Notes under the pieces: generated by a model
Database searches by the model: none
What the model was told of the DNA's origin: nothing
Seen by the model: only the letters and a program-made list of their open reading frames with translations
Part shown: positions 1,684-35,198 of the stretch, piece by piece
How the letters are laid out: each line of letters starts with the position of its first letter
Numbering within the stretch: position 1 is the stretch's first letter
Made by a program: the position numbers and the translations under genes
Virus record (IMG/VR): IMGVR_UViG_3300027708_000012
Location: 281,370-345,369 of that record
Reading direction: 5' to 3' (one strand)
Length of the DNA stretch: 64,000 nucleotides

Positions 1684-1707
1684 AAAGAAACCCGCCGAAG
1701 CGGGTTC
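1684..1707 (-). terminator. Rho-independent terminator after tmRNA
   Basis: GAACCCGC-TTCG-GCGGGTTTCTTT on minus strand. Confidence 0.8.
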
Positions 1708-1716
1708 TACTATTTT

Positions 1717-2080
1717 TGGTGACAAAGCATAGTTGCTTCGCGAGGGCAGTTTTTTAGGCTGCTAATGCAAATTCTGCATCATTGGCAGAAGCCAATGTTA
1801 CTGGAACTTGAAAATACTCGAATGTAGATGTTTTAGCATTTACTTTAATTTGCTTGATTTACAGTCATCGCCTACTGAGTTGCCGTCTTCAATATCTAAC
1901 CCCGTCGAAACCATGGCAGGCCCATCATAAACACACTCAAATCTGAAAGGTGTCGCCTGTGACGCCTTGTGTTTATAACACCACCACTCGGGACTCAAAC
2001 CCGCATGTGTTTATGGTGGACCTGGCGGGAGTCGAACCCGCGTCCGAGATTCCTTCTATCCAAAGGAATTACAACTATTT
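1717..2080 (-). ncRNA. ssrA: Circularly permuted (two-piece) tmRNA
   Basis: Minus strand order: acceptor piece ending GCGGGTTCGACTCCCGCCAGGTCCACCA (CCA at 2014), 90-nt spacer, then 5' piece GGGCCTGCCATGGTTTCGACGGG (1923). Acceptor stem GGGCCTG/CAGGTCC has G3.U70. Tag frame ends ANDAEFALAA* at 1754. Confidence 0.92.
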
Positions 2081-2092
2081 CATTTAACCCAA

Positions 2093-2296
2093 TTACTTGG
2101 GTTGAATATTTGCTGCCTGCAAGCCTTTTTGACCTTGTACCACATCAAATGTCACTGATTGATTCTCTTGCAGAACTTTGAATCCTGATGTTTGAATCGC
2201 TGAGTAGTGTGCGAAAAGATCCTCGCCGCCGCCGTCTGGAGTAATAAACCCAAAACCTTTGGTTTCATTAAACCATTTTACTTTACCTGTTGCCAT
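2093..2296 (-). CDS. cspA: Cold-shock domain protein
   Basis: [21 protein letters not shown]...DLFAHYSAI...GLQAANI; RNP1/RNP2 motifs. Confidence 0.95.
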
Positions 2297-4588: not shown

Positions 4589-5230
4589 TTATCGCTTTCT
4601 TAGTTCGTTGACAAAATCTAACAGTAGCGCATGATGTTTTCCATTGTGGTACTTGCCTTTCATCCAACTATAGCTATTGTACCAAAATTGTTCACTTTCT
4701 GGATGAGCGCCAATCAGTCCTATACGTCCTTTTATTATAGCCATAGGGTCGTCGTTAGCATACTTGGCAATAGTATCATAATACCCTGTACCAGTAAAGG
4801 CACAGCCATCGTACCAAAACATGTTCATTGGGGTTCCTAGCCATTCTATTTTTATGTTTTTAGCATGCGGGCGGCGAGTATCTGTATTAGGTTGTTTTAG
4901 ATACTGTACAGCATCTATATCGCCTAGTAAATTAAAATAATGTTTGCCAGCCCAATACGCCCCCATGCATATACCAAGATAATAACCACCATTAGCTATA
5001 AACTGCTTAATACGAGCACCGTTATACTTAAACGCACGATTGAAGCTACTAGCATCACCGAAGCCGCCAGGAACTGCTACAATATCTACGCCATCAAAGA
5101 AGTTGTCTTCTAATTCGTTGATGCCAAAGATTTTAAAATTATAAAAGGCACTAAGTGCCTTTATAATACCATTTCCACTCTGCACTGAACACTTAGGATC
5201 GTACAAGAATAGTGCAATTGTAGGTTTCAT
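4589..5230 (-). CDS. BPL_N / class I glutamine amidotransferase-like protein
   Basis: VPGG, YLGICMGAY, HPE motifs; start ATG 5230 overlaps upstream stop. Confidence 0.8.
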   Translation of the reverse strand: MKPTIALFLYDPKCSVQSGNGIIKALSAFYNFKIFGINELEDNFFDGVDIVAVPGGFGDASSFNRAFKYNGARIKQFIANGGYYLGICMGAYWAGKHYFNLLGDIDAVQYLKQPNTDTRRPHAKNIKIEWLGTPMNMFWYDGCAFTGTGYYDTIAKYANDDPMAIIKGRIGLIGAHPESEQFWYNSYSWMKGKYHNGKHHALLLDFVNELRKR

Positions 5231-5538: not shown

Positions 5539-5618
5539 CTGTGGATTACGGATTCCCACGACACCTTATCTTGTGCCCGATTTAAAAATGCTTCCGAAAA
5601 AATTACGGAAGCTGCTTA

Positions 5619-6263
5619 TTACTTCCCCAATAGGCTATCAACCTTTGCTTCAGCAATGTCTAAACGAGCTTCGATAGCATCTAATGCTGGATCTGCTGGA
5701 ACTGCAACTGCTTCAACAACTTGTTGAACTACTTCTGGAGCAACTTCTTCACCTGTTGCGGCTGCAATAACTTCAGCAACTGCGTCAGCGGCAGCTTGTG
5801 CTACTTCTGGAGCTGGCGTTGGCATGTCAGCAACTGCGGCGATGATAGCGGCTGTGATTGCCACTGGATCAACTACAACTTCTGGCTCTGCTACAACAAC
5901 TGCCATAACTGCGGCTGAAACAATATCAGCAACTTCTGAGTGCTCAACTGGTTCTGCTTCGTACTGTGCTGTAACAACATCAGCAACTATGTCAGCGGCT
6001 TCTGCATGATCGGCACTTGGAGATAGTGCAACTACTTCTTCAACTTCAAAAGGTGCATCATTTGCTACGGCAGCAATGATAGCATCAATGTGAGCTTCTG
6101 TTTTTTCGGCAATTAAGTGATCAACTTGAACTTCAACTAGAGACAATCGTGCGTCTAGTTCTTCGATGCTTGTGGCATTGTCTGTATTAACTGATGTACC
6201 AGTTAGTGTTGCTAACTTGGCTTCTACGGAAACTAATCTTGCGGCTAAATCTTCTAATCTCAT
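5619..6263 (-). CDS. Acidic Ala/Val/Glu-rich protein with three short coiled-coil repeats
   Basis: LxARLxxxE(A/V)(K/Q)(L/V)xxL three times; AAGGAG RBS. Confidence 0.75.
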   Translation of the reverse strand: MRLEDLAARLVSVEAKLATLTGTSVNTDNATSIEELDARLSLVEVQVDHLIAEKTEAHIDAIIAAVANDAPFEVEEVVALSPSADHAEAADIVADVVTAQYEAEPVEHSEVADIVSAAVMAVVVAEPEVVVDPVAITAAIIAAVADMPTPAPEVAQAAADAVAEVIAAATGEEVAPEVVQQVVEAVAVPADPALDAIEARLDIAEAKVDSLLGK

Positions 6264-6346
6264 GTGATGCTCCTTAAGGGTTATGAGTGTGTACCACTAC
6301 GGCACACATCTATTTAAGTGATAACCGATTACAGCAGTATTACAAG

Positions 6347-7057
6347 TTAACTCCAATATCGATTATGGTATAAACTATCCCAGTAGGCTTTGTTATTGCG
6401 ATTGATAAAATTCTTAACAAGGTACTTGCCCATGCCAAGGTATCCCATCTTTTTAAATCTACGCGAGTCTTGCCCAAGGTGGTGGCGAACAATCCTAAAC
6501 TTCCTAGGATTGTATTTTTTAGATAAAAAGTAATCTTCACTTGTTAATAAGTTCTCAGGAAACCCGCCGTACTCTTCAAACTTATCTCTGCGTGTGAGCA
6601 TAAACGCACCGACCGCAAATGGACTAAAGAATTTTAGCGTATGGTTAATTAAATTAAATGCTGTGAATCCAATCTTTGCCCTAATATCCTTATCATAGCA
6701 TTTGATATTCAATCCAATAAGGTCTAGTTTTTTACGTTCAATTAATCTAACAGCATCACGAATAACAGTGGGTTTAAAAAATCGTACATCAGCATCAATG
6801 AATAAGATATAAGGTGTAGTGACTAGTCTAGCACCATTGTTTTTAGCAATACTAACAGGGCCGCCATCGATAATTTCTACATTTAAGTTACCCTTCATCA
6901 ATTGAATAACTTCACGTGTATTGTCCGTTGAACAGTCTGCAATGATGATTCTAGTGCTACCTATCATTTGATTGCGTAGGTGTGTTAATAGATAGGGAAT
7001 ATAGTTTTCCTCATTCTTACAAGGAATTACAATAGTAATCTTATCGCTGAATATCAT
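6347..7057 (-). CDS. Glycosyltransferase family 2
   Basis: TIVIPCKNEE, IIADCSTDNT, LFIDADV, SEDYFLS motifs. Confidence 0.9.
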   Translation of the reverse strand: MIFSDKITIVIPCKNEENYIPYLLTHLRNQMIGSTRIIIADCSTDNTREVIQLMKGNLNVEIIDGGPVSIAKNNGARLVTTPYILFIDADVRFFKPTVIRDAVRLIERKKLDLIGLNIKCYDKDIRAKIGFTAFNLINHTLKFFSPFAVGAFMLTRRDKFEEYGGFPENLLTSEDYFLSKKYNPRKFRIVRHHLGQDSRRFKKMGYLGMGKYLVKNFINRNNKAYWDSLYHNRYWS

Positions 7058-7224
7058 TGTTTCTTGCATTCGCCTACTACCTTAAAACTTTTAAACTTTA
7101 GTTGCCACTTCAATGTGCTTAGGACTTGCTCGCAAGTCTTTTGATCGTGGAATGTTAGTTCTACTTTTCCTGGCTGATCCGTCGGATCGTTTACGTGTAT
7201 CGCTATTAGGATCAATAACCACAT
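7054..7224 (-). CDS. Small exported protein (56 aa)
   Basis: MWLLILIAIHVNDPTDQPGKVELTFHDQKTCEQ...GECKKQ*; AGGAG RBS; ATGA overlap with GT2. Confidence 0.6.
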   Translation of the reverse strand: MWLLILIAIHVNDPTDQPGKVELTFHDQKTCEQVLSTLKWQLKFKSFKVVGECKKQ

Positions 7225-7978
7225 TGTCTTTCTCCTGTGTCCATGTAACTATCTCCCAAGTACCGTTATGATGTTCTACTAGGGCTGTACAACTTTCAAC
7301 CCAATCGCCATCATTCATATAAACAACATCATCTATGTTTTTAATTTCAGCATGATGTATGTGCCCGCATATAACACCATCAAAGCCACGCTTTTTACAA
7401 TATCCAGCAAGGTTCTTTTCAAAGTGGAACATAAAGTCCACAGCTTTCTTTACTCGCTTCTTAAGGTACTGACTAAGGCTAAAGTACCCAAAACCAAAGC
7501 GATGGCGTAGCCAATTGAACTTGCTATTAATCGATAAAATGACATCATATGCTTTGTCTCCTAAAAATGCTATCCACGGTGCTAGTCTAGTAATGCCATC
7601 AAACAAGTCACCGTGTGTAACTAAGTAATGATTGCCGTCAGCACCTATGTGTTCTATTTGATTGTGTATCTCAACGAGTCCAAAACTGAATCCATAAGGA
7701 ATCATTGGTCTTAAAAATTCGTCGTGATTTCCTGCAATATAAACGACACGAGTACCACGTTTAGCATGACCGAGAACACGACGCACCACATTAGTGTGGC
7801 TCTGTTTCCATCTCCATTTATTTTGTTGGATTCGCCAGGCATCAATTATATCTCCTACAAGGTATAGGGTATCACAAGAGTTGTGTTTAAGAAAGTTGTT
7901 TAACTTATCTGCTTGACAATCCCTTGTGCCTAAATGCACATCACTAATGAAAATGCTACGATAAGTTTTGGTTTCCAT
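7091..7978 (-). CDS. Metallophosphoesterase, PlcP/LpxH-like phospholipase C
   Basis: FISDVHLG, LVGDIID, GNHDEFLR, HGDLFD, GHIHH, GDWVESCTALVE motifs. Confidence 0.88.
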   Translation of the reverse strand: METKTYRSIFISDVHLGTRDCQADKLNNFLKHNSCDTLYLVGDIIDAWRIQQNKWRWKQSHTNVVRRVLGHAKRGTRVVYIAGNHDEFLRPMIPYGFSFGLVEIHNQIEHIGADGNHYLVTHGDLFDGITRLAPWIAFLGDKAYDVILSINSKFNWLRHRFGFGYFSLSQYLKKRVKKAVDFMFHFEKNLAGYCKKRGFDGVICGHIHHAEIKNIDDVVYMNDGDWVESCTALVEHHNGTWEIVTWTQEKDNVVIDPNSDTRKRSDGSARKSRTNIPRSKDLRASPKHIEVATKV

Positions 7979-8022
7979 ACCATTATTTATCGTAGCATTA
8001 TGTATGCAATATTACAAGAGCG

Positions 8023-8181
8023 TTACACTTGTACTACTGTCCACTTGTGTGTGAATGGTTTGCCTTCGGCCTTGTGTTTCAAGATTTTGGCGAACTCTTT
8101 CAAGCGAAGTTCGTATTGTTTCTCGGCATCGTGGTCGACGCAAGCCTTGTACAGTTTAGCTATTAGCTTTTTCTGTTTCAT
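8023..8181 (-). CDS. Small hypothetical protein (52 aa)
   Basis: [30 protein letters not shown]...; GGAGG RBS. Confidence 0.6.
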
Positions 8182-8802: not shown

Positions 8803-10893
8803 TTACTCTCCTTGCTTATATTGCATGTCTACCATTCTTTTATGTAGGCTATCGCTACTCATTTGTCGCAGTACTTGTACGTTGTCTATGACTTTTTGGC
8901 CTTTATAAACTTCTTTAGGTTCATAAAAAGCCGTATCTCTTAATACAAACGAATATGCTTCAAATCCTCTTGGTTGTGTAGCCATTGATGCAAGATCAAC
9001 ACCTGCGGCTAGATCGTTTGGTTGTACATTTCTATTAACTGTACTTGTCTGTGACTGTATATTTTCTTGCATTAACTCAAAACGCTGTTGCATCATCATT
9101 TCTGACAATGGATTGCCAGCCTTACCCATGCCGCCAAAACTAGCAACTTGCATTGGTGGTGTTTCTACTTCCATAATACGTTCTTGTAATCGTGGCTGAT
9201 ATACAGGTGCGGTTTGTGTAGGTGCTGGACTTATACTAGATAAATTTAATGACCCTAGTGGATTGTAGGCAAACGGATTTCGACTAACTGTTAATCCTGT
9301 ACCACTACTGGCTTGTTGTTGGGATTCTGTTGCTGCAGGTGCTGTAGGTTTTAACATAGCTACTGATGTTGACTGTGTTTCTTGTTGTGCTTGTTGCGGT
9401 GGTGTATATGCAGCTTGTTGAATCTGTACAACACTTCCATTAGATTGTTGTTGTACTTCTTGTTGTACTTCTTGTTGTACTTGTTGTACTACACGACTAG
9501 TCTGTTGCTGTTGCGTAGTAGTCTGTTGCTGTTGTTGCGTATTTTGACTTGTTTGAATTGCGGTCTGCTGGCTAGCTTGTGTATTTTGACTGGAGAACTG
9601 TGCGGCTGCTGTGGCACTGTTAGCACTCATATCTTGATTCATACTGATTGCAAGATTACTAGCGGCTTGTGAACTTTGTTGGGTATTTTCAAATGCTTTG
9701 GCAGCATTTTGTACGGCTGATTGTTGTATTGCTTGTTCTTTGGCCTGTGCTGATTTGACCACACTCATTGCTAATTTGCTAGGGCCACCTCCGCTGGTTG
9801 CAGAGCCTGCTTGTTGTGGGCCTGCCTGACTTGGTCCAGCACTTGGTGGAGGTGCAGATTGTGCTACTTGAGGAGGACCGCCGGCTGGTTGAGGTTGTGT
9901 TGGTGCAGGCCCAGCTTGTTGCGGGCTAGGCTGTGCCGGATTATCTTGTGCTACCGCAGGATTTTGATTTGGATCTTGCCCCGGTTGCTGAGTTGGTAGT
10001 CCTTGTTGTGCAGGTGCTTGCTGTGCAGGTTGTTGTGCTTGCTGTTGTGGACTTGCTTGAGCTAATGCAGGTGCCGCATCGGCTACAGCAGGGGGTGCCG
10101 CCGCTGGTGCAGGTGATGTATAGTTCATTGCAGGTACAAATGAAGTAGCACTTGCATTTGAAACTGTAGATCCTAGTATAGAATTTTTAACAGTAGCTAA
10201 AGCGTATCCTGGGCAAGTAGGACTTGATAATGGGTCGTTTATACACGGATCGGGCTTTACTGTATATTTCAAGCTAAAATTAACATTAATAATTTCTGGA
10301 CCATAATTGCCAGCCCAATAATTATTGTCTCGGCCTACAAAGCCTACCTGTGCATTACTAAAGCTAGTTGCTGGTACAGGACTAGAAAAAGTTTCACTGA
10401 AGTTAAAGTTAGTCCAGTTATATTTCCTATTTGTTTGACTAGTATAATCATAGTTTGCTGCTAGTCCTCCACCGCTATTATAGAACTTAACATACGCACC
10501 TAAATAATCTTGACGTCCATCATCCCAGCCGTTGCCGTTCTTAGCAGTAAACCCGAAATTAAATCCTCCAAGTTGTACACCACTTCCGCCTATAGACAAT
10601 GCCTTGTTTATACTGACAATTTGATTTAAGTCTGTAGTGCCGTATGAATAGTTAATAACACCATCTGGTCTTATACTTGGTTTAGGACCACAGTTACCAG
10701 CCTGACCGGCCTGGAAGCACAGTGTATTAACATAGACACCGTTGTTCCAAATGCTAGTCGTATCTGTAGGCGCAGTACCGTTATTAATTAAATTACCGGT
10801 AGTAGCGTCTACTTGAGCATTAGTGGAAGCCGAATATACGATAAGCAATAACGCCCAGTATACTACCGATACCAACTTTCTTATAAGTGTCAT
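8803..10893 (-). CDS. Exported protein with beta-sandwich domain and Gln/Pro-rich linker
   Basis: Signal-peptide-like N-terminus; DPCINDPLSSPTCPGY motif; long Q/P/A/S low-complexity region. Confidence 0.8.
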   Translation of the reverse strand: MTLIRKLVSVVYWALLLIVYSASTNAQVDATTGNLINNGTAPTDTTSIWNNGVYVNTLCFQAGQAGNCGPKPSIRPDGVINYSYGTTDLNQIVSINKALSIGGSGVQLGGFNFGFTAKNGNGWDDGRQDYLGAYVKFYNSGGGLAANYDYTSQTNRKYNWTNFNFSETFSSPVPATSFSNAQVGFVGRDNNYWAGNYGPEIINVNFSLKYTVKPDPCINDPLSSPTCPGYALATVKNSILGSTVSNASATSFVPAMNYTSPAPAAAPPAVADAAPALAQASPQQQAQQPAQQAPAQQGLPTQQPGQDPNQNPAVAQDNPAQPSPQQAGPAPTQPQPAGGPPQVAQSAPPPSAGPSQAGPQQAGSATSGGGPSKLAMSVVKSAQAKEQAIQQSAVQNAAKAFENTQQSSQAASNLAISMNQDMSANSATAAAQFSSQNTQASQQTAIQTSQNTQQQQQTTTQQQQTSRVVQQVQQEVQQEVQQQSNGSVVQIQQAAYTPPQQAQQETQSTSVAMLKPTAPAATESQQQASSGTGLTVSRNPFAYNPLGSLNLSSISPAPTQTAPVYQPRLQERIMEVETPPMQVASFGGMGKAGNPLSEMMMQQRFELMQENIQSQTSTVNRNVQPNDLAAGVDLASMATQPRGFEAYSFVLRDTAFYEPKEVYKGQKVIDNVQVLRQMSSDSLHKRMVDMQYKQGE

Positions 10894-12187
10894 CTTCACT
10901 CACCTCTGTTTCTTTTGGTAATTTTTCTGGATTTGATTCCCACTCTACTTTAGCTTGGGCTCCAATCTTACCTTCGTACGGGCATGGTGTGCCTGCTGCC
11001 ATCATAGCATCAAATACACGACGATCTTGACACATAGTAGCAACTGCGGCAACTTTCATCCCCATGTCGTATAATGTCTTGCTTAATTTTAATCGTTCAC
11101 AATTCATATCACGAACTGTGCCGCCTGAACTAACACCAAAGATTTGTGTTTGTACTGAACCGCTTGTGCCTGTTGTACATAGGTCAGCATTACCACCTGA
11201 CATCATTGCTGGTGCAACGGCTGTTGGTGGAGGTTGAATAACACGCTGAGTAATATCACTTGTATTAACATTGTTATTTGTCATTGAACCACTGTTAATA
11301 TTCTGATTAACGTTATTATTTGCATTAGTACTTGTACTAGCATTAGTATTATTATTGTTATTGGTCATTGTACCGTTATTGGTATTCTGATTAATATTAG
11401 TCATCGTTCCTGTGTTAATATTGTTATTAGTATTGCTAGTAGTAGCTGTTGTAGTGTTGATATTACGATTGGTCATATCACCTGTATTAACATTATTATT
11501 TGTGTTAACACTGGTACTCGTATTAACATTGTTGTTATTGTTAGTCATTGTACCATACTGGTAGTTAGTATTGGTGCTTGTACTAGTGTTAACATTGTTG
11601 TTATTGTTAGTATTAACACTAGTGCTAGAACTAACATTATTATTGTTATAAGTCATTGTACCTGAATTAATGTTATTATTGGTGTTGACATTATTGCTAG
11701 TACTTGCGCTGACATTGTTGTTATTGTACGTCATTGTACCAGTATTAATATTGTTATTGGTGTTAACATTATTGCTAGTACTGGTACTTGTATTGACATT
11801 GTTGTTATTGTTAGTCATTGTACCTGTATTAACATTATTATTATTAAATGTCTGAGTACCGCTATTAACGTTATTGTTGTTATTAGTGTAGGTTACTGCG
11901 CCACTCATAACGTTGTTATTGTTATTATTGTTGGTCATAGTACCACTATTAACGTTATTGTTGTTATTAGTGTTAGTTGTACCGCCACTTAGCACAGTAT
12001 TATTATTTGTAGTTGTAGTACCGCTATTAACATTATTTGTGTTAATTGTACTTGTGCTAACGCTTGTACTATTAGTATCTACGAGACTTTTAGAATCGTA
12101 GCCGCCTTGGTTAATCACAGTTTGAGGTAGCACGGTGGTGCTTGATAGTACCAACATTAATGCTGGCATTATATTTTTAATACGCAT
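10820..12187 (-). CDS. Exported Asn/Thr-repeat protein with Cys-containing C-terminal domain and TM anchor
   Basis: Signal-like N-terminus; repeats NNNNVN(S/T)GTMT; PPPTAVAP...CERLKLSKTL...GTPCP; C-terminal hydrophobic helix. Confidence 0.85.
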   Translation of the reverse strand: MRIKNIMPALMLVLSSTTVLPQTVINQGGYDSKSLVDTNSTSVSTSTINTNNVNSGTTTTNNNTVLSGGTTNTNNNNNVNSGTMTNNNNNNNVMSGAVTYTNNNNNVNSGTQTFNNNNVNTGTMTNNNNNVNTSTSTSNNVNTNNNINTGTMTYNNNNVSASTSNNVNTNNNINSGTMTYNNNNVSSSTSVNTNNNNNVNTSTSTNTNYQYGTMTNNNNNVNTSTSVNTNNNVNTGDMTNRNINTTTATTSNTNNNINTGTMTNINQNTNNGTMTNNNNNTNASTSTNANNNVNQNINSGSMTNNNVNTSDITQRVIQPPPTAVAPAMMSGGNADLCTTGTSGSVQTQIFGVSSGGTVRDMNCERLKLSKTLYDMGMKVAAVATMCQDRRVFDAMMAAGTPCPYEGKIGAQAKVEWESNPEKLPKETEVSEDDTYKKVGIGSILGVIAYRIFGFH

Positions 12188-19647: not shown

Positions 19648-21555
19648 TTACTTTTTGTCAGTAGGGTCAACCTCTGTGAAAGCCGCATTAACTGACTGGC
19701 CTTCTTCAGGTTGTACTGGTGCTGATTGCGCTGCACTTTCTGCAGCTTGCTTCTTGGCCATAACTGGACCTGCTGCCTCAAAAAATGTTTCAACTGATTT
19801 TTGAATAACATCTTTGTCGTCCCCTGCGCAAGCAGTTTCTACTGCTTTAACAGCATCGTCAAACTTAGTCTTTTCTTCTTCAGTCAATTGATCTTTGTAT
19901 GTATCATAGTCTTTCTTGATACTGTGTGTAGTACCTTCAGCATTGTTACGTGCTGTGATTAATTCTGCTTGTTTCTTATCTGCTTCGGCATTTTCCTCAG
20001 CTTCTTGAACCATGCGTTTGATCTCAGCTTCTGTCAATCCGCTATCTGACTTGATAGTGATTTTGTTTTCTTTGCCGGTCTTTTTATCCCTGGCACTTAC
20101 ATTTAAAATACCGTTTGCATCGATATCTAATGTAACTTCAATCTGTGGCATGCCACGTGGTGCAGGATCAATACCTTCCAAGTTAAACTCGCCAAGCGAT
20201 TTATTGTACTTGAATAAGTCACGTTCGCCCTGAGCAACCTTAATAGTTACTGCTGGCTGATTGTCATCTGCTGTACTAAATGTTTGGCTATGTTTGGTCG
20301 GGATAGTTGTGTTTTTAGCAATCAGCTTGGTAAACACACCGCCCATTGTTTCAATACCTAGTGTCAATGGAGTAACGTCCAACAACAATACGTCTGTCTT
20401 GTCGCCAGCTAGAACAGCGCCTTGTACTGCGGCACCAGCGGCAACTGCTTCGTCTGGGTTAACGTCTTTACGTGGAGCCTTACCAAACAGTTTCTCAACT
20501 GCTTCTTGTACTTTAGGCATACGTGTTTGACCACCAACTAGAATAACTTCGTCGATGTCTGCGGCGCTAACTTTAGCATCTGCCATAGCAACTTTACATG
20601 GCTCAATTGAACGCTGGATCAGTCCGTCTACCATTGCTTCAAACTTAGCACGGCTGATAGTTACATTCATGTGCTTAGGACCGTTTGCATCTGCTGTAAT
20701 GTAAGGCAAGTTAACACTTGTACTTGCGGCTGTAGATAATTCAATCTTGGCTTTTTCAGCAGACTCTTTCAAACGTTGTAATGCAAGAACGTCTTGCTTC
20801 AAATCAACTCCGTTGTCTTTCTTGAACTCGTCTACCAAATAGTCCATGATAGCTTGGTCAAAGTCTTCACCGCCTAGGAATGTATCGCCGTTTGTTGACA
20901 ATACTTCAATTTGCTTGTCGCCATCAATGTTAGCGATTTCAATGATTGAAATATCAAATGTACCACCACCCAAGTCATAGACTGCAATCTTGCGATCTTT
21001 CTTGTCTGCTTTGTCAACACCATAAGCCAATGCGGCCGCTGTCGGCTCGTTGATAATACGTAGAACTTCTAAGCCTGCAATACGTCCGGCATCTTTAGTA
21101 GCTTGACGCTGGCTATCGTTGAAGTAAGCTGGAACTGTAATAACAGCTTGGGTCACTGTTGTACCTAAATAGTCTTCAGCAGTTTTTTTCATTTTGCGAA
21201 GTACTTCAGCTGATACTTGCTGTGGTGCAAGTTTTTCGCCGTTTGCTTCGATCCAAGCATCACCGTTGTCTGCTTTAATAATGCTGTAGGGCATCAAGTC
21301 AATATCTTTTTGCACAGCAGCTTCGTCAAACTTGCGACCAATAAGGCGCTTGCTGGCGTAAATTGTATTTTTTGGGTTTGTGACTGCTTGTCGTTTTGCT
21401 GTTGCACCAACTAGGATTTCGTCCTTTGTATATGCAATGATTGATGGTGTTGTTCTTGCGCCTTCGCTATTTTCAATAACTTTTGCTACTCCATTTTCTA
21501 GGATAGCTACGCAACTGTTTGTTGTACCTAAATCGATACCGATGATTTTACTCAT
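19648..21555 (-). CDS. dnaK: Chaperone DnaK (Hsp70)
   Basis: [35 protein letters not shown]; full length 635 aa. Confidence 0.98.
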
Positions 21556-28655: not shown

Positions 28656-30290
28656 TTAACCTTTTGTTATTAATTTATTTACCTCGGGGAGATAAAGGTA
28701 TTTAATTCCTGATCTCCTCAAAGTGCTTAATGCATCATCAATTGTTTCTACTAAGGGTTCTCCTCCTAAATTAAAACTAGTATTAAATAAAATTGGAACA
28801 CCAGTTTGATTATTAAACTCAGTTATCAAATTATAAAAATGAAAATTTTGTTCAATATTAATTGTTTGTACTCGACACGTATTATCCACATGTACAATGC
28901 TTGGTATTTGATTTTTCTTATTTTCTAAAACATTCACAGCATACATCATAAATGGACTGTTAGACGTGTTACGCATATCAAACCATTCGTGTACATGCTC
29001 TTCTAATACAGTTCCGGCAAACGGCCTGTACCATTCTCTTCCTTTTACACGATTAACAATGTCTTTACCTTGTTGTACTCTAGGGTCGAACAAAATACTA
29101 CGATTGCCTAATGCACGAGGTCCAGCTTCTGAACCTCCTTGAAATATAGCTACTATATTTTCAGAAACTAATAGATTAACAATGTCCGAGTAACTAACTG
29201 TTTGCTCAGTTTCATTTGATTCTAATTTATAATTGTAACTAGGAGTTGGACCTAGACAAAAAGATAATTGTTTATTTGGAGTCGTATTATTAGTAGTACT
29301 ATAATAAGCCAGTTTAGCTATACCTATACTTTGCCCCCCATCGTGCGCAGGAGGGTCTATGAATACATTAACGTCTTTAGGAATGTGTTTTAAATATTCA
29401 TAATTAGCTACACAATTTAATGCATAGCCGCCTGATATTACTAAATTTTTAGAATTGGATAATTTAAGTGCGGTTAAAATTAAATCAGTGGCTACTGATT
29501 GAGTAGATTGCTGTACAGCATAACAAAGATTGGCCGCATCATATTGTTCTACTTCGTCAAGGAATGGCGCAGCATACATTGCTGTATTAGGCCTAAACAA
29601 CTGTTTGTTAGGTGTTTTTTTACCGTTAACAGTTACATATATTTGTGGAATAGTTTCATCGTTCTTTCCGTACGAACTTAATCCCATTGCCTTGCCGCAC
29701 TCTAAATTTGTATGCCCTAAAGCAATACTTAGTGCAGAGTATATACTGGCAATACCTTGCTCATTAGCAAAGACTTTTTCTTCGTGAAACTTAGTAAGTT
29801 GATTATAGTTATTTCCAAACTTTTTATATATAGATGTAAATGTTTTTGGAAATTTTGCTAGATATATGCTTTCAACTTCGTATCCGGCTTTGCCAGCTTG
29901 GTCTAATTCGATATATTTTCCAGCAGCATCTATAACTACACATACCGCTTGGTCAAAACCAGAACTATAAAATCCACTGGTTGCATGATATAGATGATGC
30001 TCACCATTATTAAACACTTGCCTGTGATTGTCAATTAATCCAAGTTTTAAGGCAAATTTAATAAACGGGCCTGCTTCATTTGTAGTATCTGATGACCCTA
30101 CAGATATGGCTAGACAATCTACTTTATTCGTGTATTCAAGAACTTTAAGTAGTCCTAAGAATGGACTATCGTCGTATTTTTTTCGACTTAGTCTTTCTTC
30201 TTCTACATAAAAAACAATATTACCATTTTTAAGTAAACAAGTAGATGCGTTATGCCCTGTACTTATACCTACAATCCAGTTGTCACGCAT
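28656..30290 (-). CDS. Carbamoyltransferase (NodU/CmcH/TobZ family)
   Basis: EEERLSRKK, HHLYHA, GPRALGNRSIL, KGREWYRPFA, NTSFNLGGEP. Confidence 0.92.
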   Translation of the reverse strand: MRDNWIVGISTGHNASTCLLKNGNIVFYVEEERLSRKKYDDSPFLGLLKVLEYTNKVDCLAISVGSSDTTNEAGPFIKFALKLGLIDNHRQVFNNGEHHLYHATSGFYSSGFDQAVCVVIDAAGKYIELDQAGKAGYEVESIYLAKFPKTFTSIYKKFGNNYNQLTKFHEEKVFANEQGIASIYSALSIALGHTNLECGKAMGLSSYGKNDETIPQIYVTVNGKKTPNKQLFRPNTAMYAAPFLDEVEQYDAANLCYAVQQSTQSVATDLILTALKLSNSKNLVISGGYALNCVANYEYLKHIPKDVNVFIDPPAHDGGQSIGIAKLAYYSTTNNTTPNKQLSFCLGPTPSYNYKLESNETEQTVSYSDIVNLLVSENIVAIFQGGSEAGPRALGNRSILFDPRVQQGKDIVNRVKGREWYRPFAGTVLEEHVHEWFDMRNTSNSPFMMYAVNVLENKKNQIPSIVHVDNTCRVQTINIEQNFHFYNLITEFNNQTGVPILFNTSFNLGGEPLVETIDDALSTLRRSGIKYLYLPEVNKLITKG

Positions 30291-31779: not shown

Positions 31780-32880
31780 TTATAGTGCCGGTAATGCATC
31801 ATAATCCAACGTTTCGCTCATAATGCCAATAACATAATTAGTTGATTCGTTTTCTTGTAATGCTGTTTGTTTTTTACTTGTATCAGTATGTTTATTAAAC
31901 CATGGGATTGGAGTTGACTTTGGTGCAATTTGTTGATATTTAATACCAATGTCCTTTAATGCACCCACTGCTGTATAGTCTACAAAGTCTTTTAAGATAT
32001 TGGCATTTAAACCAATAACAGGACCTTTCTTAAACAAATAGTCTGCCCATTCTTTTTCTTCACGAATAACGTCCATATACATAGAATAGACTTCTTGTTC
32101 GCACTCTTGTTTGGCTTCAGCAAATCTACTATCTTCCTTGACCACTTGATTAATCAAATAGGCGGTCCAACCTTTGTGTAATAGTTCGTCTTGCAAGATC
32201 AAACTAATAATATTGCCGTTACCCATAAAGATTTTATTCTCTACCATTGCTAGACTTGTAGCAAAGCTAACCATAAAACGGAAGGCTTCTAGTGCGTAAC
32301 TGGCATTTAGTGCTAACCAGATAGCTCTAATATGTAATTTTTCACCAACATCTTCACCAAGCTCTTTATGACAATTAATTACGTGCAATTGGTCATAATA
32401 ATTGCCTACACTTGAGGCCATACTGATAATCTCTTGTGTGTCGTGGATAGTGTTGAATACATCCTTAGGAACATTGTAGATATTACGAATGATATGGCTA
32501 TAACTCTTTGAGTGAATGTTTGTTTCAAAGAATCCCCAGTTGTACATTAGTGCTTCTACTTCTGGCAAACTACAGACTGGAGTAAACACTTGTGTAGGGC
32601 CGCGACCTTGCAAACTGTCCAGTGCTGTTTGTCGTAGCAAGTTACTGGTAAAGATATGTTTGACAGCATCGCTGGCATCTTTAAAATCGTTAGCATCTTT
32701 GGTCAAACTAATTTCTTCTGGTTGCCAAAAGAAACCACGTGCTGTAGCTTCAAAGTCTGCAATCTTTTTATACTTGACTTCCTCAAATCTTTGAATGGTA
32801 ACAGGACCTGCTGGGTCTAAGAACATCTTGCGATTAAGATAGTCTGTCTTTGTTTTTAAATTATATTGTTCTTTACTCAT
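31780..32880 (-). CDS. nrdB: Ribonucleotide reductase class Ia beta subunit
   Basis: FFWQPEEI, LDSLQGRGP, ETNIHSKSY, LEAFRF, DELLH. Confidence 0.95.
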   Translation of the reverse strand: MSKEQYNLKTKTDYLNRKMFLDPAGPVTIQRFEEVKYKKIADFEATARGFFWQPEEISLTKDANDFKDASDAVKHIFTSNLLRQTALDSLQGRGPTQVFTPVCSLPEVEALMYNWGFFETNIHSKSYSHIIRNIYNVPKDVFNTIHDTQEIISMASSVGNYYDQLHVINCHKELGEDVGEKLHIRAIWLALNASYALEAFRFMVSFATSLAMVENKIFMGNGNIISLILQDELLHKGWTAYLINQVVKEDSRFAEAKQECEQEVYSMYMDVIREEKEWADYLFKKGPVIGLNANILKDFVDYTAVGALKDIGIKYQQIAPKSTPIPWFNKHTDTSKKQTALQENESTNYVIGIMSETLDYDALPAL

Positions 32881-35198
32881 AGCTTACATGCCTCGCAATC
32901 TTCTTCGTTGTCAAAATCAATAGCTTCTAACATGGTAGGTGCTTCTTCGGCATCTGCTTTACTACCTTGTTTGTTAATCAAACTATAGTAGAATGTTTTC
33001 AATCCCCACACCTGTGCCTGCATTAAATTTTTAGCAATCAATGTAGTTGGCACTTTACGACCTTCAAAGTGCGCTGGGTTATAGAATGTATTAGTACTAA
33101 TTGATTGATCAACATAGGCGGCGAGAACAGAAGCTGTTTTCAAATACCCGTCGCAATCTTTCTGATCCCACATCAACTGATACTTATTTTTAAGTTTATG
33201 GTATTCAGGAACAACTTGTATAAATGATCCTGCTTTTGATTCTTTAACACTGATCAAACTCATGGGCAACTCAATTCCATTAGTGCTGTTTATAACAACA
33301 CTACTGCTTTCGACTGGGGCGATGGCCATTAGTGTAGCATTGCGTACTCCGTACTGTTTCATATTAGTACGTAGCGTTTCCCAATCAAGTTCTGGGGCAA
33401 AGTTTGCTAGTTCATTAACACCTTCTGCTCGTAATTCCCAAGGGAATATGCCTTGACCGTATCGTGTGTGTGAGCTATGCTGACAAGGACCACGCTCTCG
33501 GGCCAAATCAACTGTTGCTTCTGTCAAGTAATAGGCTTGATGCTCCATCCAACTCTTAACATCCTGTAGTGCATCTTTCTCACCATACTTAAATCCACGT
33601 TTGGCGTGCCAGTAGGCTAGATTAGTAACACCAATACCCAGTGGACTAATTTCGTCGTTACTTAATTTGCTCTGGATTGAAAGAAAATCTTGATAATCTA
33701 AAATATTGCACAGGCTACGCTGTAAGATACGGCAAGCTCGGCGCATGTCTTCTGGATTACGGAAGGCTCCCCAGTTGATTGATCCTAGTGTACATAACGC
33801 TATGCGGCCTTCAGCGTCATCCAGACGTTTGAAAGATTTTGTAGGTAATAGGATTTCACAACACAAATTGCTTTGGTAGATAGTGTGATACTCTGGGTCA
33901 AACGGACCCTGGTTCATTACATTGTCAATGAACACTAGATAGATACGTCCTGTATCAGTACGCTCTTTCAATATGCCCGACTTGAATACTTCTTCAGCGG
34001 ACATAGTTTTTGTACGCAGGTCTTTGCGTTTTTCATATTTTACATATAGCTCTTCAAATAGTGCTGTGTTACTATAAAAAGCTTCGTACAAGTCAGGTAC
34101 TTCGTTAGGATCAAAGAATGTTATAGTCTCTTTGTTCTTAAATCGTCTCCAGAAAAATTTAGATAACACAACTCCGTAGTCCATGTGTCTAACTCGAGTT
34201 TCCTCTGTGCCTTGGTTGTTTTTAAGAACAATAAGGTCATCAAACTGATGATGCCAGATTGGATAGAACACAGTAGCACTAGCATTACGAATACCACCTT
34301 GACTACAACTACGCAAGTCACCGAACCATTTCTTTAAGAAAGGGATCATACCAGTATGCATGATTTCGCCACCGCGAATTGGGGAGCCCAATGGGCGAAG
34401 TCGACCGATTTCCAATCCAATCCCCGCACGTTTACTGGCATACTTTGCCATCATTTCACCACTAGCAAATATACTATCGAGGTCATCATCGCTACGTATG
34501 AGAACACAAGAACTAAACTGCTTAGTAGGAGTGCCAAGTCCGGCCAGCACAGGAGTAGCAAGAGTAAACAAACCATCAGAAGCCGCATTGTAATACTCCT
34601 TTATATAACGCATCCTTGCGCTGTTTGGTTCTTCACGATGAAAGACAGTAGCGGCCGCAACCATATATCTAATCTGTGGAGTTTCATAAGTTTCTTTTGT
34701 AGCACGATTACGTACTAGATATTTTTCAATTAGTTGTTCAATAGCTGCGTAACTGTATTGCTCGTCCTTTTCGTGATCGAGCATTGCATCCATTTTGTTC
34801 CAGTCTTCTTCGCTATACCACTCTAGCAGTTCTTTAGAGTACAGACCAATTTTAACATTTTTTTGTACAATAGAAAAAAGGCTTGGAGGTTTGTATGAAC
34901 CGTAAACATCTTTACGCAACATTGACAAACGCTGTTTACCTGCAACATATTGATAGTTTGTATGTCCAATATCAGGATTTGATTCTACGTCTATCAAATC
35001 AACAACAGCACGTAATGTAATCTCGTCAATTTCTTTTGTTGTGATACCATCGTAAAAGTGCGGCTGACTTTTGATCTCAATCATACTCTGACTGACGTCA
35101 GCTATTCCCTTGCATACTTTGGCAATTTGAGCTTGCCATTTTTCTACAGCTAGCAACTCTGTAGTTCCATTTCTTTTTATTACCGTTATGTTGTTCAT
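32877..35198 (-). CDS. nrdA: Ribonucleotide reductase class Ia alpha subunit
   Basis: ATP cone, QFSSCVLI, SNLCCEI, LCTLG, C-terminal CEACKL. Confidence 0.97.
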   Translation of the reverse strand: MNNITVIKRNGTTELLAVEKWQAQIAKVCKGIADVSQSMIEIKSQPHFYDGITTKEIDEITLRAVVDLIDVESNPDIGHTNYQYVAGKQRLSMLRKDVYGSYKPPSLFSIVQKNVKIGLYSKELLEWYSEEDWNKMDAMLDHEKDEQYSYAAIEQLIEKYLVRNRATKETYETPQIRYMVAAATVFHREEPNSARMRYIKEYYNAASDGLFTLATPVLAGLGTPTKQFSSCVLIRSDDDLDSIFASGEMMAKYASKRAGIGLEIGRLRPLGSPIRGGEIMHTGMIPFLKKWFGDLRSCSQGGIRNASATVFYPIWHHQFDDLIVLKNNQGTEETRVRHMDYGVVLSKFFWRRFKNKETITFFDPNEVPDLYEAFYSNTALFEELYVKYEKRKDLRTKTMSAEEVFKSGILKERTDTGRIYLVFIDNVMNQGPFDPEYHTIYQSNLCCEILLPTKSFKRLDDAEGRIALCTLGSINWGAFRNPEDMRRACRILQRSLCNILDYQDFLSIQSKLSNDEISPLGIGVTNLAYWHAKRGFKYGEKDALQDVKSWMEHQAYYLTEATVDLARERGPCQHSSHTRYGQGIFPWELRAEGVNELANFAPELDWETLRTNMKQYGVRNATLMAIAPVESSSVVINSTNGIELPMSLISVKESKAGSFIQVVPEYHKLKNKYQLMWDQKDCDGYLKTASVLAAYVDQSISTNTFYNPAHFEGRKVPTTLIAKNLMQAQVWGLKTFYYSLINKQGSKADAEEAPTMLEAIDFDNEEDCEACKL

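What the first reader, a model, noticed from the sequence alone, without database searches (positions are those of the whole stretch)
6347..8027. Phage PlcP-like phospholipase plus glycosyltransferase with pho-box-like repeats: mining host membrane phosphate
Seen: phosphoesterase, small exported protein and GT2 overlap in one operon; upstream TGTAAC-N5-TGTAAT 11-bp direct repeat (8011-8027). Known: PhoB-controlled PlcP releases diacylglycerol that a glycosyltransferase (usually GT4 Agt) converts to P-free glycolipid. Inference: the phage triggers lipid remodelling to free phosphate for DNA synthesis, using a GT2 partner and a host-regulator box joined to a phage late promoter.
Basis: partly seen in the sequence, partly recalled or inferred. 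Interest (0 to 1): 0.7.

Follow-up and report, generated by a model that had tools for sequence, protein, structure and literature searches.

The report
Phage lipid-remodelling operon behind a Pho box
A 345-kb freshwater jumbo phage carries a bacterial-type PlcP phospholipase C, a small conserved protein and a glycosyltransferase behind a phosphate-starvation (Pho) box fused to a late promoter, so it probably swaps its host's phospholipids for sugar lipids when phosphate is scarce.

Summary
On the minus strand lie a 295-aa metallophosphoesterase (7091-7978), a 56-aa ORF (7054-7224) and a 240-aa GT2 (6347-7069), overlapping in turn. Upstream are TGTAAC-N5-TGTAAT (8011-8027) and a T4-type late promoter, GATAAATA (7984-7991).

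The interpretation passes every test I could run:
- **PlcP, not LpxH.** The enzyme nests inside the bacterial agt-linked PlcP clade (46-58% identity). It is split 100/100 from the true LpxH of the same bacteria and scores far below the LpxH cut-offs.
- **Glycosyltransferase slot.** In about 20 of 80 sister-phage loci a full-length Agt-type GT4 fills the GT2's slot. The two have been swapped repeatedly.
- **Pho box.** The repeat is kept upstream of plcP across sister phages, sometimes as canonical TGTCAC-N5-TGTCAC. It sits 11 or 21-22 nt before TAAATA. It also precedes phage pstS genes and the next gene here. E. coli PhoB binds TGTAAY-type sites in vivo.
- **Small ORF.** It is a real gene under purifying selection, but nothing shows it is exported.

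Enzyme activities, the GT2's acceptor, PhoB binding and the host remain untested. This is a new variant of known kinds: bacterial PlcP-Agt lipid renovation, and phage Pho-regulon auxiliary genes.

The parts
8011..8027 (-). Pho-box-like direct repeat TGTAAC-N5-TGTAAT (11-bp period), 21 nt upstream of TAAATA. Its first half-site overlaps the TAA stop of the upstream 52-aa gene (8023-8181).
   Evidence: 2 observed against 0.07 expected. Conserved in sister loci. Phased spacing to TAAATA. TGTAAY-type sites are bound by E. coli PhoB in ChIP-seq (PMC10294691).
7984..7991 (-). T4-type late promoter GATAAATA, 5 nt before the plcP ATG. The mRNA is probably leaderless or has a very short leader.
   Evidence: ATAAATA is 20-fold enriched in intergenic DNA. 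58 of its 72 copies lie 0-60 nt upstream of gene starts, including tail-lysozyme and tail-spike-like genes.
7091..7978 (-). plcP: PlcP-family metallophosphoesterase (phospholipase C of lipid renovation). The catalytic domain is about aa 1-250. The tail (aa 251-295) is an unconstrained read-on over the next gene.
   Evidence: all metal-binding motifs kept; 46-58% identity to bacterial agt-linked homologues; tree; tail not conserved.
7054..7224 (-). SM: conserved 56-aa protein of unknown function with two invariant Cys. It has its own Shine-Dalgarno sequence (AGGAG 9 nt before the ATG). It is present in all 80 sister loci and in none of the 80 bacterial plcP loci.
   Evidence: (changes by codon position 1/2/3 = 22255/12285/30460 in the SM frame; aa identity 63% against 38% in the PlcP-tail frame).
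6347..7069 (-). GT2-family (GT-A) glycosyltransferase, 240 aa. Its start overlaps the SM stop by 16 nt. It is the proposed diacylglycerol glycosyltransferase standing in for Agt.
   Evidence: PF00535 72 bits; PF13506 Glyco_transf_21 27.7 bits against a 21.7 cut-off; invariant D92-A93-D94 and E178-D179. Replaced by a GT4 Agt in sister loci.
6328..6344 (-). Second Pho-box-like repeat, TGTAAT-N5-TGTAAT, 11 nt upstream of TAAATA.
   Evidence: 11 such sites upstream of this gene's homologues in sister loci.
6311..6316 (-). TAAATA core of a late promoter for the next gene.
5619..6263 (-). NX: 214-aa acidic Ala/Val/Glu-rich protein with no family. It has its own box and promoter, so it is co-regulated with the operon.
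5607..5626 (-). Terminator-like hairpin followed by a T run, just after the NX stop. It is the likely 3' end of the transcripts.

Best explanation
This is a phage-borne lipid-renovation module.

**Proposed mechanism.**
- The first gene encodes a PlcP-type, probably Mn-dependent, phospholipase C. It cuts the phospho-head group off host phospholipids and leaves diacylglycerol.
- The GT2 is translationally coupled through the small SM gene. It is proposed to put a sugar on that diacylglycerol, so the membrane is refilled with phosphorus-free glycolipid while the head-group phosphorus becomes available.
- Transcription starts at a T4-type late promoter. That promoter carries, one or two helical turns upstream, a direct repeat with the form and position of a proteobacterial Pho box. 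Host PhoB is therefore expected to raise expression, or allow it earlier, when the infected cell is phosphate-starved.
- The same box marks a small phage 'pho regulon': plcP-SM-GT, the next gene NX, and pstS in sister phages.

**Shown.** Family membership of PlcP, the GT2/GT4 swap, conservation and phasing of the box, its link to pstS, and selection on SM.

**Inferred.** Substrates, products, PhoB binding, and the benefit to the phage.
For: **PlcP identity.**
- Bacterial homologues are 46-58% identical. Characterised PlcPs are only 46-51% identical to each other (PMC8528852; PMC9239053).
- In 62 of 80 bacterial loci the next gene is a full-length homologue of the phage GT4, which is the canonical plcP-agt operon.
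- The tree places the phage proteins inside this clade, split 100/100 from true LpxH.
- On TIGR01854 true LpxH scores 185-336 bits, the bacterial PlcP paralogues about 42, and the phage protein 32.
- All metallophosphoesterase motifs are kept.

**Glycosyltransferase.**
- 17 of 59 distinct sister loci carry a 335-aa GT4 at the same junction.
- It keeps Agt's H104, the RVxxEKN motif and the FPSxxxTFG motif.
- The GT2 and GT4 labels need 14 changes on the PlcP tree, at least 4 of them forced by well-supported branches.

**Pho box.**
- 82 exact TGTMAY-N5-TGTMAY sites lie in 579 kb of sister loci, against 3.2 simulated.
- 54 lie upstream of plcP, 11 upstream of NX and 12 upstream of pstS. The pstS genes score 391-401 bits on PstS model NF008171, cut-off 339.
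- Spacing to TAAATA is 11 nt in 52 of 66 distinct sites and 21-22 nt in 11.
- Half-site type (A or C at position 4) is concordant between genes of one genome.
- The same pattern, with at most 1 mismatch, finds sites upstream of 18 of 78 bacterial plcP genes, against a background of 0.004 per 370 nt. It also finds the Pho box of a bacterial pstS, 10 nt before its -10.
- E. coli PhoB ChIP-seq sites include TGTAATAGTTCTGTAAC and TGTAACCCGTATGTAAC.
- No PhoB-type winged helix is encoded by the phage.

**Presence in nature.** Lake metatranscriptome contigs hold pieces of all three genes, some identical to the window.
Against: - No activity has been measured for any of the three proteins.
- The GT2 has no homologue next to plcP in the 80 bacterial loci, and its acceptor cannot be read from sequence.
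- Its AlphaFold model was too poor to use, pLDDT 51.
- In this window the box spacer is GCTC, not A/T-rich, and the box sits 21 rather than 11 nt from TAAATA.
- PhoB is known to act through sigma-70 region 4 (own knowledge). How it would act on a T4-type late promoter is unknown.
- No late-sigma or clamp homologue was found with PF04542 or PF02916, which is a weak test.
- The first half-site overlaps the stop codon of the upstream gene in part of the loci, which explains some of its conservation.
- Sister loci are related, so site counts are not independent events.
- RNA-library contigs do not prove transcription.
- The host is unknown.
Confidence: 0.7

Rival explanations
1. The enzyme is PlcP-type and remodels lipids, but the GT2 does not act on diacylglycerol. 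It glycosylates another acceptor (a polyprenol-phosphate or LPS precursor, another lipid, or a cell-wall polymer) and is merely co-transcribed.
For: GT2 is a vast family. The best named matches are only generic: TIGR04283 at 65 bits against a 182 cut-off, TarS-like and chondroitin synthase chains in the PDB, and automatic cluster names such as carotenoid glycosyltransferase. No bacterial plcP locus has this GT2.
Against: It occupies exactly the slot of a bona fide Agt, with the same overlap with the SM stop codon. It has been swapped with Agt several times in one phage population. It passes the Glyco_transf_21 cut-off; that family holds the lipid-directed Pgt enzymes (PMC8231724). Bacterial plcP is known to pair with several glycosyltransferase families (PMC4796936; PMC8115612).
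Confidence: 0.2
2. The module remodels the membrane for a purpose other than phosphate economy, such as superinfection exclusion, changed receptor display or control of lysis. The direct repeat would then be the site of a phage-encoded regulator rather than host PhoB.
For: Lipid renovation changes phage adsorption in Ruegeria and Pseudomonas (titles and abstracts of PMC9938194 and PMC9804370). The repeat is mostly TGTAAT, not TGTCAT. Two of its three target genes in this genome (NX and a 147-aa orphan) have no known link to phosphate.
Against: The same box drives pstS, the archetypal Pho-regulon gene, in 12 sister loci. Some lineages use canonical TGTCAY boxes. The geometry equals that of bacterial Pho promoters. 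PhoB binds TGTAAY sites in E. coli. No PhoB-like DNA-binding domain is encoded by the phage.
Confidence: 0.1
3. The current database annotation is right: the enzyme is LpxH (UDP-2,3-diacylglucosamine pyrophosphatase) acting in lipid A synthesis, with a GT2 for LPS modification.
For: Source names given by JGI and by GenBank for the Mosig and S-SRM01 homologues. The only solved relatives are LpxH. Virome papers count viral 'lpxH' as an LPS gene.
Against: Scores are 44 and 32 bits against cut-offs of 134 and 190. Matches to solved LpxH have E-values of only 1e-3. The tree splits it from LpxH with full support, and each bacterium tested has both a true LpxH and a separate PlcP paralogue. Synteny with agt and pstS, and the Pho boxes, also argue against it.
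Confidence: 0.03

Closest known systems
Bacterial PlcP-Agt lipid renovation pathway (S. meliloti SMc00171, Phaeobacter MED193, SAR11 HTCC7211 PlcP/GTcp, P. aeruginosa PA3219/PA3218)
   Same: - The same enzyme family, at 46-58% identity.
- The same gene order, plcP then a glycosyltransferase.
- A Pho box upstream.
- Sister phages even carry the orthologous GT4 Agt, with its catalytic His and both UDP-sugar motifs.
   Different: - It is encoded by a 345-kb lytic-type jumbo phage.
- The promoter is a T4-type late promoter, not a sigma-70 promoter.
- A 56-aa gene, absent from the bacterial operons searched, is wedged between the two enzymes.
- In this window Agt is replaced by an unrelated GT-A (GT2) enzyme. 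As an inverting enzyme (inference from the family), it would make a beta-linked rather than an alpha-linked glycolipid.
Cyanophage Pho-regulon auxiliary genes (pstS, phoA, phoH) driven by host PhoBR (Zeng and Chisholm 2012; own knowledge, not checked here)
   Same: Phage genes for phosphate economy carry host-type Pho boxes and are expected to respond to the host's phosphate status. Sister phages of this one carry pstS behind the same box.
   Different: - The cargo is a lipid-remodelling operon, not a transporter or phosphatase.
- The hosts are probably heterotrophic freshwater Proteobacteria.
- The box is fused at a fixed phase to a late promoter.
LpxH (UDP-2,3-diacylglucosamine pyrophosphatase)
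   Same: The calcineurin-like metallophosphoesterase fold and metal-binding motifs. It is the closest solved structure by sequence.
   Different: - A separate clade, well below the family cut-offs.
- A different genomic context.
- Bacteria that have the PlcP-type gene also have a separate true LpxH.
'LpxH' of Pelagibacter phage Mosig (Mosig_00120) and Synechococcus phage S-SRM01
   Same: These are phage-borne PlcP-type homologues (46% and 37% identity). In Mosig the gene is divergently paired with pstS, and Mosig groups within the PlcP clade in the tree.
   Different: - No glycosyltransferase or SM gene lies next to them.
- They belong to a different phage family (Kyanoviridae).
- The repeats in the shared Mosig intergenic region are TGTTAA-type.

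Membership tests
PlcP (lipid-renovation phospholipase C, metallophosphoesterase) | Intact metallophosphoesterase metal-binding motifs (DxH, GDxxD, GNHD/E, H, GHxH) | tested here: met
   D13, H15, D43, N84, H85, H122, H206 and H208 are invariant in alignments with 45 and 8 relatives. Pfam Metallophos, 47 bits.
PlcP (lipid-renovation phospholipase C, metallophosphoesterase) | Groups with agt-linked PlcP proteins and apart from LpxH in a phylogeny | tested here: met
   The split from true LpxH of the same genomes has 100/100 support. The phage clade nests among proteobacterial PlcP-type proteins. No experimentally characterised PlcP sequence could be put in the tree.
PlcP (lipid-renovation phospholipase C, metallophosphoesterase) | Identity to known members at the level seen among characterised PlcPs (about 46-51%) | tested here: met
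   46-58% identity to homologues in Pseudomonas, Azospirillum, Bradyrhizobium, Roseibium and others. Benchmarks come from PMC8528852 and PMC9239053.
PlcP (lipid-renovation phospholipase C, metallophosphoesterase) | Operon with a diacylglycerol glycosyltransferase (or other P-free lipid gene) | tested here: met
   Sister phages have plcP-SM-agt with a GT4. This window has plcP-SM-GT2 at the same junction. The GT2's acceptor itself is untested.
PlcP (lipid-renovation phospholipase C, metallophosphoesterase) | Pho box upstream (Pho regulon member) | tested here: met
   An 11-bp-period direct repeat at 8011-8027, conserved and phased in sister loci and shared with pstS. Binding itself is not tested.
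PlcP (lipid-renovation phospholipase C, metallophosphoesterase) | Mn-dependent phospholipase C activity on PG, PE or PC that yields diacylglycerol | not testable with these tools
   Needs an enzyme assay or lipidomics.
LpxH | Reaches the curated equivalog cut-offs (NF003743, TIGR01854) | tested here: not met
   44 bits against 134 and 32 bits against 190. True LpxH of the test genomes scores 185-336 bits.
LpxH | Groups with LpxH in a tree | tested here: not met
Agt/GTcp clade of GT4 (diacylglycerol glucosyl/glucuronosyl transferase) | GT-B GT4 domains with catalytic His104 and the motifs GRVAxEKN and FPSxTDTFG | tested here: not met
   The window's enzyme is a GT-A GT2 with no GT4 domain. The sister-locus 335-aa protein does meet the feature: 36-45% identity to plcP-adjacent Agt, with H104, RVxxEKN and FPSxxETFG.
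GT2 glycosyltransferases | PF00535 above the gathering score, and a DxD motif | tested here: met
   72 bits against 23.3. D92-A93-D94 and E178-D179 are invariant in 21 homologues.
Pho box (PhoB binding site) | Two direct repeats of the TGTCAY type with an 11-bp period | tested here: met
   TGTAAC-N5-TGTAAT here. Sister loci have TGTAAY or canonical TGTCAY. TGTAAY sites are PhoB-bound in E. coli.
Pho box (PhoB binding site) | A/T-rich 4-bp spacer between the 7-bp repeats | tested here: not met
   The spacer here is GCTC. In the 66 distinct sister sites the spacer columns are mostly A/T.
Pho box (PhoB binding site) | Fixed position about 10 bp upstream of the -10-like element, in place of a -35 | tested here: inconclusive
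   52 of 66 sites lie 11 nt before TAAATA. This window's plcP site lies at 21 nt, one helical turn further, and the NX site at 11 nt. A bacterial pstS control has 10 nt.
Pho box (PhoB binding site) | Present at archetypal Pho-regulon genes of the same genome or lineage | tested here: met
   Upstream of pstS in 12 sister loci, several with three tandem half-sites. This genome itself has no pstS.
Pho box (PhoB binding site) | Bound by phosphorylated PhoB, with phosphate-dependent expression | not testable with these tools
   Needs EMSA or footprinting, and expression data.
T4-type late promoter | TATAAATA-like element close upstream of late (structural) genes; late sigma (gp55-like) encoded | tested here: inconclusive
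   The motif enrichment and position are met. No sigma-70 region 2 or gp45-type clamp was found by Pfam, but these models are poor probes for gp55 and gp45 relatives.

The most novel reading that the evidence does not exclude
A phage runs its own phosphate-gated membrane renovation. Host PhoB would act directly on a T4-type late promoter, a class of promoter not known to take response-regulator input. That would turn on a PlcP phospholipase together with a non-Agt GT2 that makes a different, probably beta-linked, glycolipid. A phage-only 56-aa protein would couple or control the two enzymes. GT2 and GT4 versions would circulate as interchangeable cassettes in one abundant freshwater jumbo-phage population.
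Probability: 0.25. Interest if true: 0.85.

Novelty: new variant of a known kind. Interest (0 to 1): 0.72.

Why it matters
- **A new kind of phage phosphate gene.** Known phage auxiliary genes for phosphate take up or release external phosphate (pstS, phoA). This module would instead tap the host's own membrane, one of the cell's pools of phosphorus. A 345-kb genome has a heavy phosphorus demand.
- **Abundance.** The gene is common in lakes: more than 600 viral contigs and thousands of metagenome proteins. It is also seen in lake RNA libraries.
- **Misfiling.** The gene is at present filed as 'LpxH, LPS biosynthesis' in annotations and virome surveys. Viral effects on lipid and phosphorus cycling are therefore being misread.
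- **Test material.** The natural GT2/GT4 swap and the phased Pho-box/late-promoter fusion offer ready material for two questions: which glycosyltransferases can serve lipid renovation, and how a host response regulator can feed into phage late transcription.

Tried and rejected
- **LpxH reading.** Rejected on scores, tree and synteny.
- **GT2 structure.** The AlphaFold model from a shallow alignment had pLDDT 51 and its C-terminal half was below 50. It was too poor for any fold search, so none was run.
- **PlcP-SM complex.** The prediction gave 'no answer' (score 0.16, mark 0.32). It is not evidence either way.
- **First scan alignment.** The 46-sequence alignment was too diverse for the locus scan. 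A 9-sequence alignment worked.
- **Phage-encoded PhoB or PstS.** No PhoB-type winged helix and no PstS in this genome. PhoH is present at genome 188598-189215 but has no box upstream.
- **Late-transcription proteins.** PF04542 and PF02916 found nothing.
- **Alternative glycosyltransferases in bacteria.** Genes downstream of plcP in the 18 bacterial loci without agt are not glycosyltransferases.
- **RNA elements.** No Rfam family lies in or near the operon. The leader hairpins fold no better than shuffles, z = -1.0 and -1.3.
- **Host search.** One bacterial genome has a PstS 73% identical to the phage's, but its GC is about 65% against the phage's 38%, and its PlcP is only 52% identical. It is therefore not taken as the host.
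- **Literature.** No paper in the library links PlcP to phage auxiliary genes.
Full report
**What is there.** The window is the last 64 kb of a 345,369-bp single-contig virus record. The record has 38% GC, CheckV rates it 94% complete, and it comes from fresh water. Its nearest cultured kin by DnaB helicase are jumbo phages of Proteobacteria: Pseudomonas phage PA5oct at about 50% and Agrobacterium phage Atu_ph07 at 51%.

Three ORFs on the minus strand overlap in turn:
- a 295-aa metallophosphoesterase at 7091-7978;
- a 56-aa ORF, here called SM, at 7054-7224;
- a 240-aa GT2 at 6347-7069.

Pfam gives Metallophos at 47 bits and Glycos_transf_2 at 72 bits. The repeat TGTAAC-N5-TGTAAT lies at 8027..8011. 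The window holds two matches where shuffles give 0.07. The second match, at 6344..6328, follows the GT2 stop directly and precedes the next gene, NX (5619-6263).

**The promoter.** ATAAATA is the most enriched intergenic 7-mer of the genome: 49 of its 72 copies are intergenic, a 20-fold enrichment. Fifty-eight of the 72 lie 0-60 nt upstream of a gene start on the same strand, including the tail-lysozyme and tail-spike-like genes. This matches the T4 late-promoter consensus TATAAATA (own knowledge). GATAAATA sits 5 nt before the phosphoesterase ATG. More than a dozen genes share this very short distance, which suggests leaderless late mRNAs.

**PlcP, not LpxH.**
- The protein scores 44 and 32 bits on the two LpxH equivalog models, whose cut-offs are 134 and 190. 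It matches solved LpxH chains only at E about 1e-3.
- A scan of one genome per prokaryote species found homologues with 46-58% identity in Alpha-, Beta- and Gammaproteobacteria.
- In 62 of those 80 loci the next gene is a full-length homologue of a GT4 that sister phages carry, which is the classical plcP-agt operon.
- Characterised PlcPs are themselves only 46-51% identical to one another (PMC8528852; PMC9239053).
- Five of these bacteria each hold a true LpxH (185-336 bits on TIGR01854), and four of them also a second, PlcP-type hit at about 42 bits.
- In a maximum-likelihood tree the two groups split with 100/100 support. The phage proteins nest inside the PlcP-type group, next to a Hyphomonas/Mosig branch and a Pseudomonas branch.
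- All metal-binding residues are kept.

I could not place an experimentally characterised PlcP sequence itself in the tree. The link to the characterised proteins rests on agt synteny, identity levels and Pho boxes.

**The glycosyltransferase slot.** Eighty IMG/VR loci hold the phosphoesterase at 77-91% identity, on contigs of up to 345-367 kb, one of 525 kb.
- All 80 keep PlcP, and all but two SM.
- The next gene is the GT2 in most.
- In 17 of 59 distinct loci it is instead a 335-aa GT4 that starts at the same junction, overlapping the SM stop.
- This GT4 has Glycos_transf_1 and Glyco_transf_4 domains.
- It is 36-45% identical over its whole length to the bacterial plcP-adjacent Agt.
- It keeps the catalytic His104 and both UDP-sugar motifs described for SAR11 GTcp and Agt (PMC8231724; alignment).
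- On the PlcP tree the GT2 and GT4 labels are scattered. They need 14 changes, at least 4 of them forced by well-supported branches, and are no more clustered than shuffled labels.

The two genes thus behave as interchangeable cassettes. This is the main argument that the GT2 does Agt's job. Independent hints are weak:
- the GT2 passes the Glyco_transf_21 cut-off (27.7 against 21.7 bits), and that family holds the lipid-directed Pgt enzymes;
- its DxD and ED motifs are invariant;
- bacterial plcP is known to pair with several glycosyltransferase families.

No bacterial plcP locus in my sample has this GT2, and its structure could not be modelled well.

**The small gene.**
- In the 129 nt where SM overlaps the PlcP tail, differences among 56 distinct sequences fall on SM codon positions 1/2/3 as 22255/12285/30460.
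- Amino-acid identity is 63% in the SM frame and 38% in the PlcP frame.
- The PlcP stop wanders from 11 to 46 codons past the SM start.

SM is therefore a real gene, with a good Shine-Dalgarno sequence and two invariant cysteines. The last 45 residues of 'PlcP' are an unconstrained read-on. SM has no family and no counterpart in bacterial operons. Its short hydrophobic N-terminus lacks a basic n-region, so 'exported' is unsupported. A complex prediction with PlcP gave no answer.

**The Pho box.** Upstream of plcP, 30 of 60 distinct sister sequences have an exact TGTAAY-N5-TGTAAY although their upstream neighbour genes differ. Others have TGTCAC-N5-TGTCAC/T, the canonical proteobacterial half-site.
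- *Counts.* In 579 kb of sister loci there are 82 exact TGTMAY-N5-TGTMAY sites against 3.2 in simulations. Fifty-four lie upstream of plcP, 11 upstream of NX and 12 upstream of a gene that is PstS by curated models (391-401 bits, cut-off 339).
- *Spacing.* Among 66 distinct sites the distance to TAAATA is 11 nt in 52, 21-22 nt in 11 and 32 nt in one, so all lie on one face of the helix. Spacer columns are mostly A/T, and several pstS and NX promoters carry three tandem half-sites.
- *Covariation.* Within one genome the half-site type (A or C at position 4) agrees between different genes, with few exceptions. This is what one trans-acting factor per host would give.
- *Controls.* The same pattern with at most one mismatch finds sites upstream of 18 of 78 bacterial plcP genes, against a background of 0.004 per 370 nt. 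It also finds the Pho box of a bacterial pstS 10 nt before its -10.
- *Precedent.* E. coli PhoB ChIP-seq sites include exact TGTAAY-N5-TGTAAY instances and the strongly PhoB-dependent phoE site, which begins TGTAAT. That paper also stresses strict spacing between the Pho box and the core promoter (PMC10294691).
- *No phage regulator.* The phage encodes no PhoB-type winged helix.

In this genome only three intergenic sites exist, all in sense orientation upstream of genes: plcP, NX and a 147-aa orphan.

The window's own plcP box has weak points. Its spacer is GCTC, it lies 21 nt rather than 11 nt from TAAATA, and its first half-site overlaps the stop codon of the upstream gene.

**How it most likely works.** The steps below are inference. 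When the host is phosphate-starved, PhoB~P occupies the box. It then raises transcription from the overlapping TAAATA element, or allows it earlier. Later, the phage's late machinery uses the same element. PlcP removes phospho-head groups from PG, PE or PC. The glycosyltransferase (GT2 here, Agt in sister phages) converts the diacylglycerol to glycolipid, keeping the membrane intact until lysis, and the released phosphorus feeds nucleotide synthesis. How PhoB would cooperate with a promoter that lacks a -35 contact partner is open.

Contigs from four lake metatranscriptomes cover parts of all three genes, some without a mismatch. One contig spans the PlcP end, SM and the GT2 start. This shows presence in RNA libraries only.

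**Comparison and novelty.** The enzyme pair and the Pho box are the bacterial PlcP-Agt system. Phage genes behind host Pho boxes are known from cyanophage pstS and phoA (own knowledge). New here are:
- the location on a jumbo phage;
- the fusion to a late promoter;
- the phage-only SM gene;
- the GT2 in place of Agt;
- the GT2/GT4 polymorphism.

No paper in the searched library connects PlcP with phage auxiliary genes. Databases and virome surveys call the gene lpxH. Other phage homologues exist. In Pelagibacter phage Mosig the gene is paired divergently with pstS, and Synechococcus phage S-SRM01 also carries one.

**Verdict.**
- Biochemistry and regulation are untested.
- It is a new variant of a known kind, with interest of about 0.7.

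Noticed in passing
window 1686-2128 (-): Phage-borne tmRNA. It matches Rfam beta_tmRNA (RF01850, 106 bits, gathering score 84) and permuted tmRNA (RF04321, 126 bits). This hints at a betaproteobacterial host.
   Followed up: no
whole genome; in the window e.g. 4592, 7990, 15618, 31254, 43153, 49607 (first base of ATAAATA): A class of late promoters has the ATG only 4-5 nt after ATAAATA, in more than a dozen genes. This implies leaderless or near-leaderless late mRNAs. Other late genes have 17-30-nt leaders with GGAG.
   Followed up: partly
window 5619-6263 (-), with box at 6328-6344: NX is a 214-aa acidic Ala/Val/Glu-rich protein with no family hit. It has its own Pho-box-like repeat 11 nt before TAAATA, and 11 such sites lie upstream of its homologues in sister loci. 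It is a co-regulated gene of unknown role.
   Followed up: partly
genome G000:C1:11433-11449 (-), locus L172: The third intergenic copy of the repeat (TGTAAT-N5-TGTAAT) lies at the end of the DnaB-like helicase gene. It sits 31 nt before a TATAAT and upstream of a 147-aa orphan gene at 10937-11380.
   Followed up: partly
L015, L024, L030, L044, L045, L046, L051, L058, L061, L069, L075, L076 (e.g. L024:2879-3883): Sister phages carry a pstS gene near the plcP cluster, behind the same box and late promoter, some with three tandem half-sites. This genome has no pstS.
   Followed up: yes
L001 (Pelagibacter phage Mosig) 4717-4866: In Mosig the PlcP-type gene (annotated LpxH) is divergent from pstS. 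The shared intergenic region holds several TGTTAA repeats, two of them 11 bp apart (4775-4780 and 4786-4791).
   Followed up: no
L030, L044, L051, L081 upstream of plcP (e.g. L081:3925-4003): In one sub-lineage the box and late promoter lie about 65-100 nt upstream of plcP and are followed by a conserved leader with two small hairpins. The fold is no better than shuffles, z = -1.0.
   Followed up: partly
window 19648-21555 (-); 28656-30290 (-); 32877-35198 (-); genome 188598-189215 (+): The phage encodes a DnaK/Hsp70 (66-70% identical to bacterial DnaK in phage-database records), a Nol-type carbamoyltransferase, a class I ribonucleotide reductase large subunit and PhoH.
   Followed up: no
window 8803-10899 (-) and 10820-12187 (-): Two large ORFs encode extremely low-complexity proteins: one Gln/Pro/Ala-rich of 698 aa and one Asn/Thr-rich of 455 aa. 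Both have N-terminal hydrophobic segments.
   Followed up: no
L011:6098-7177 (+), box at L011:5913: In one GT4-type sister locus the box and late promoter after the glycosyltransferase precede a radical-SAM protein instead of NX.
   Followed up: no
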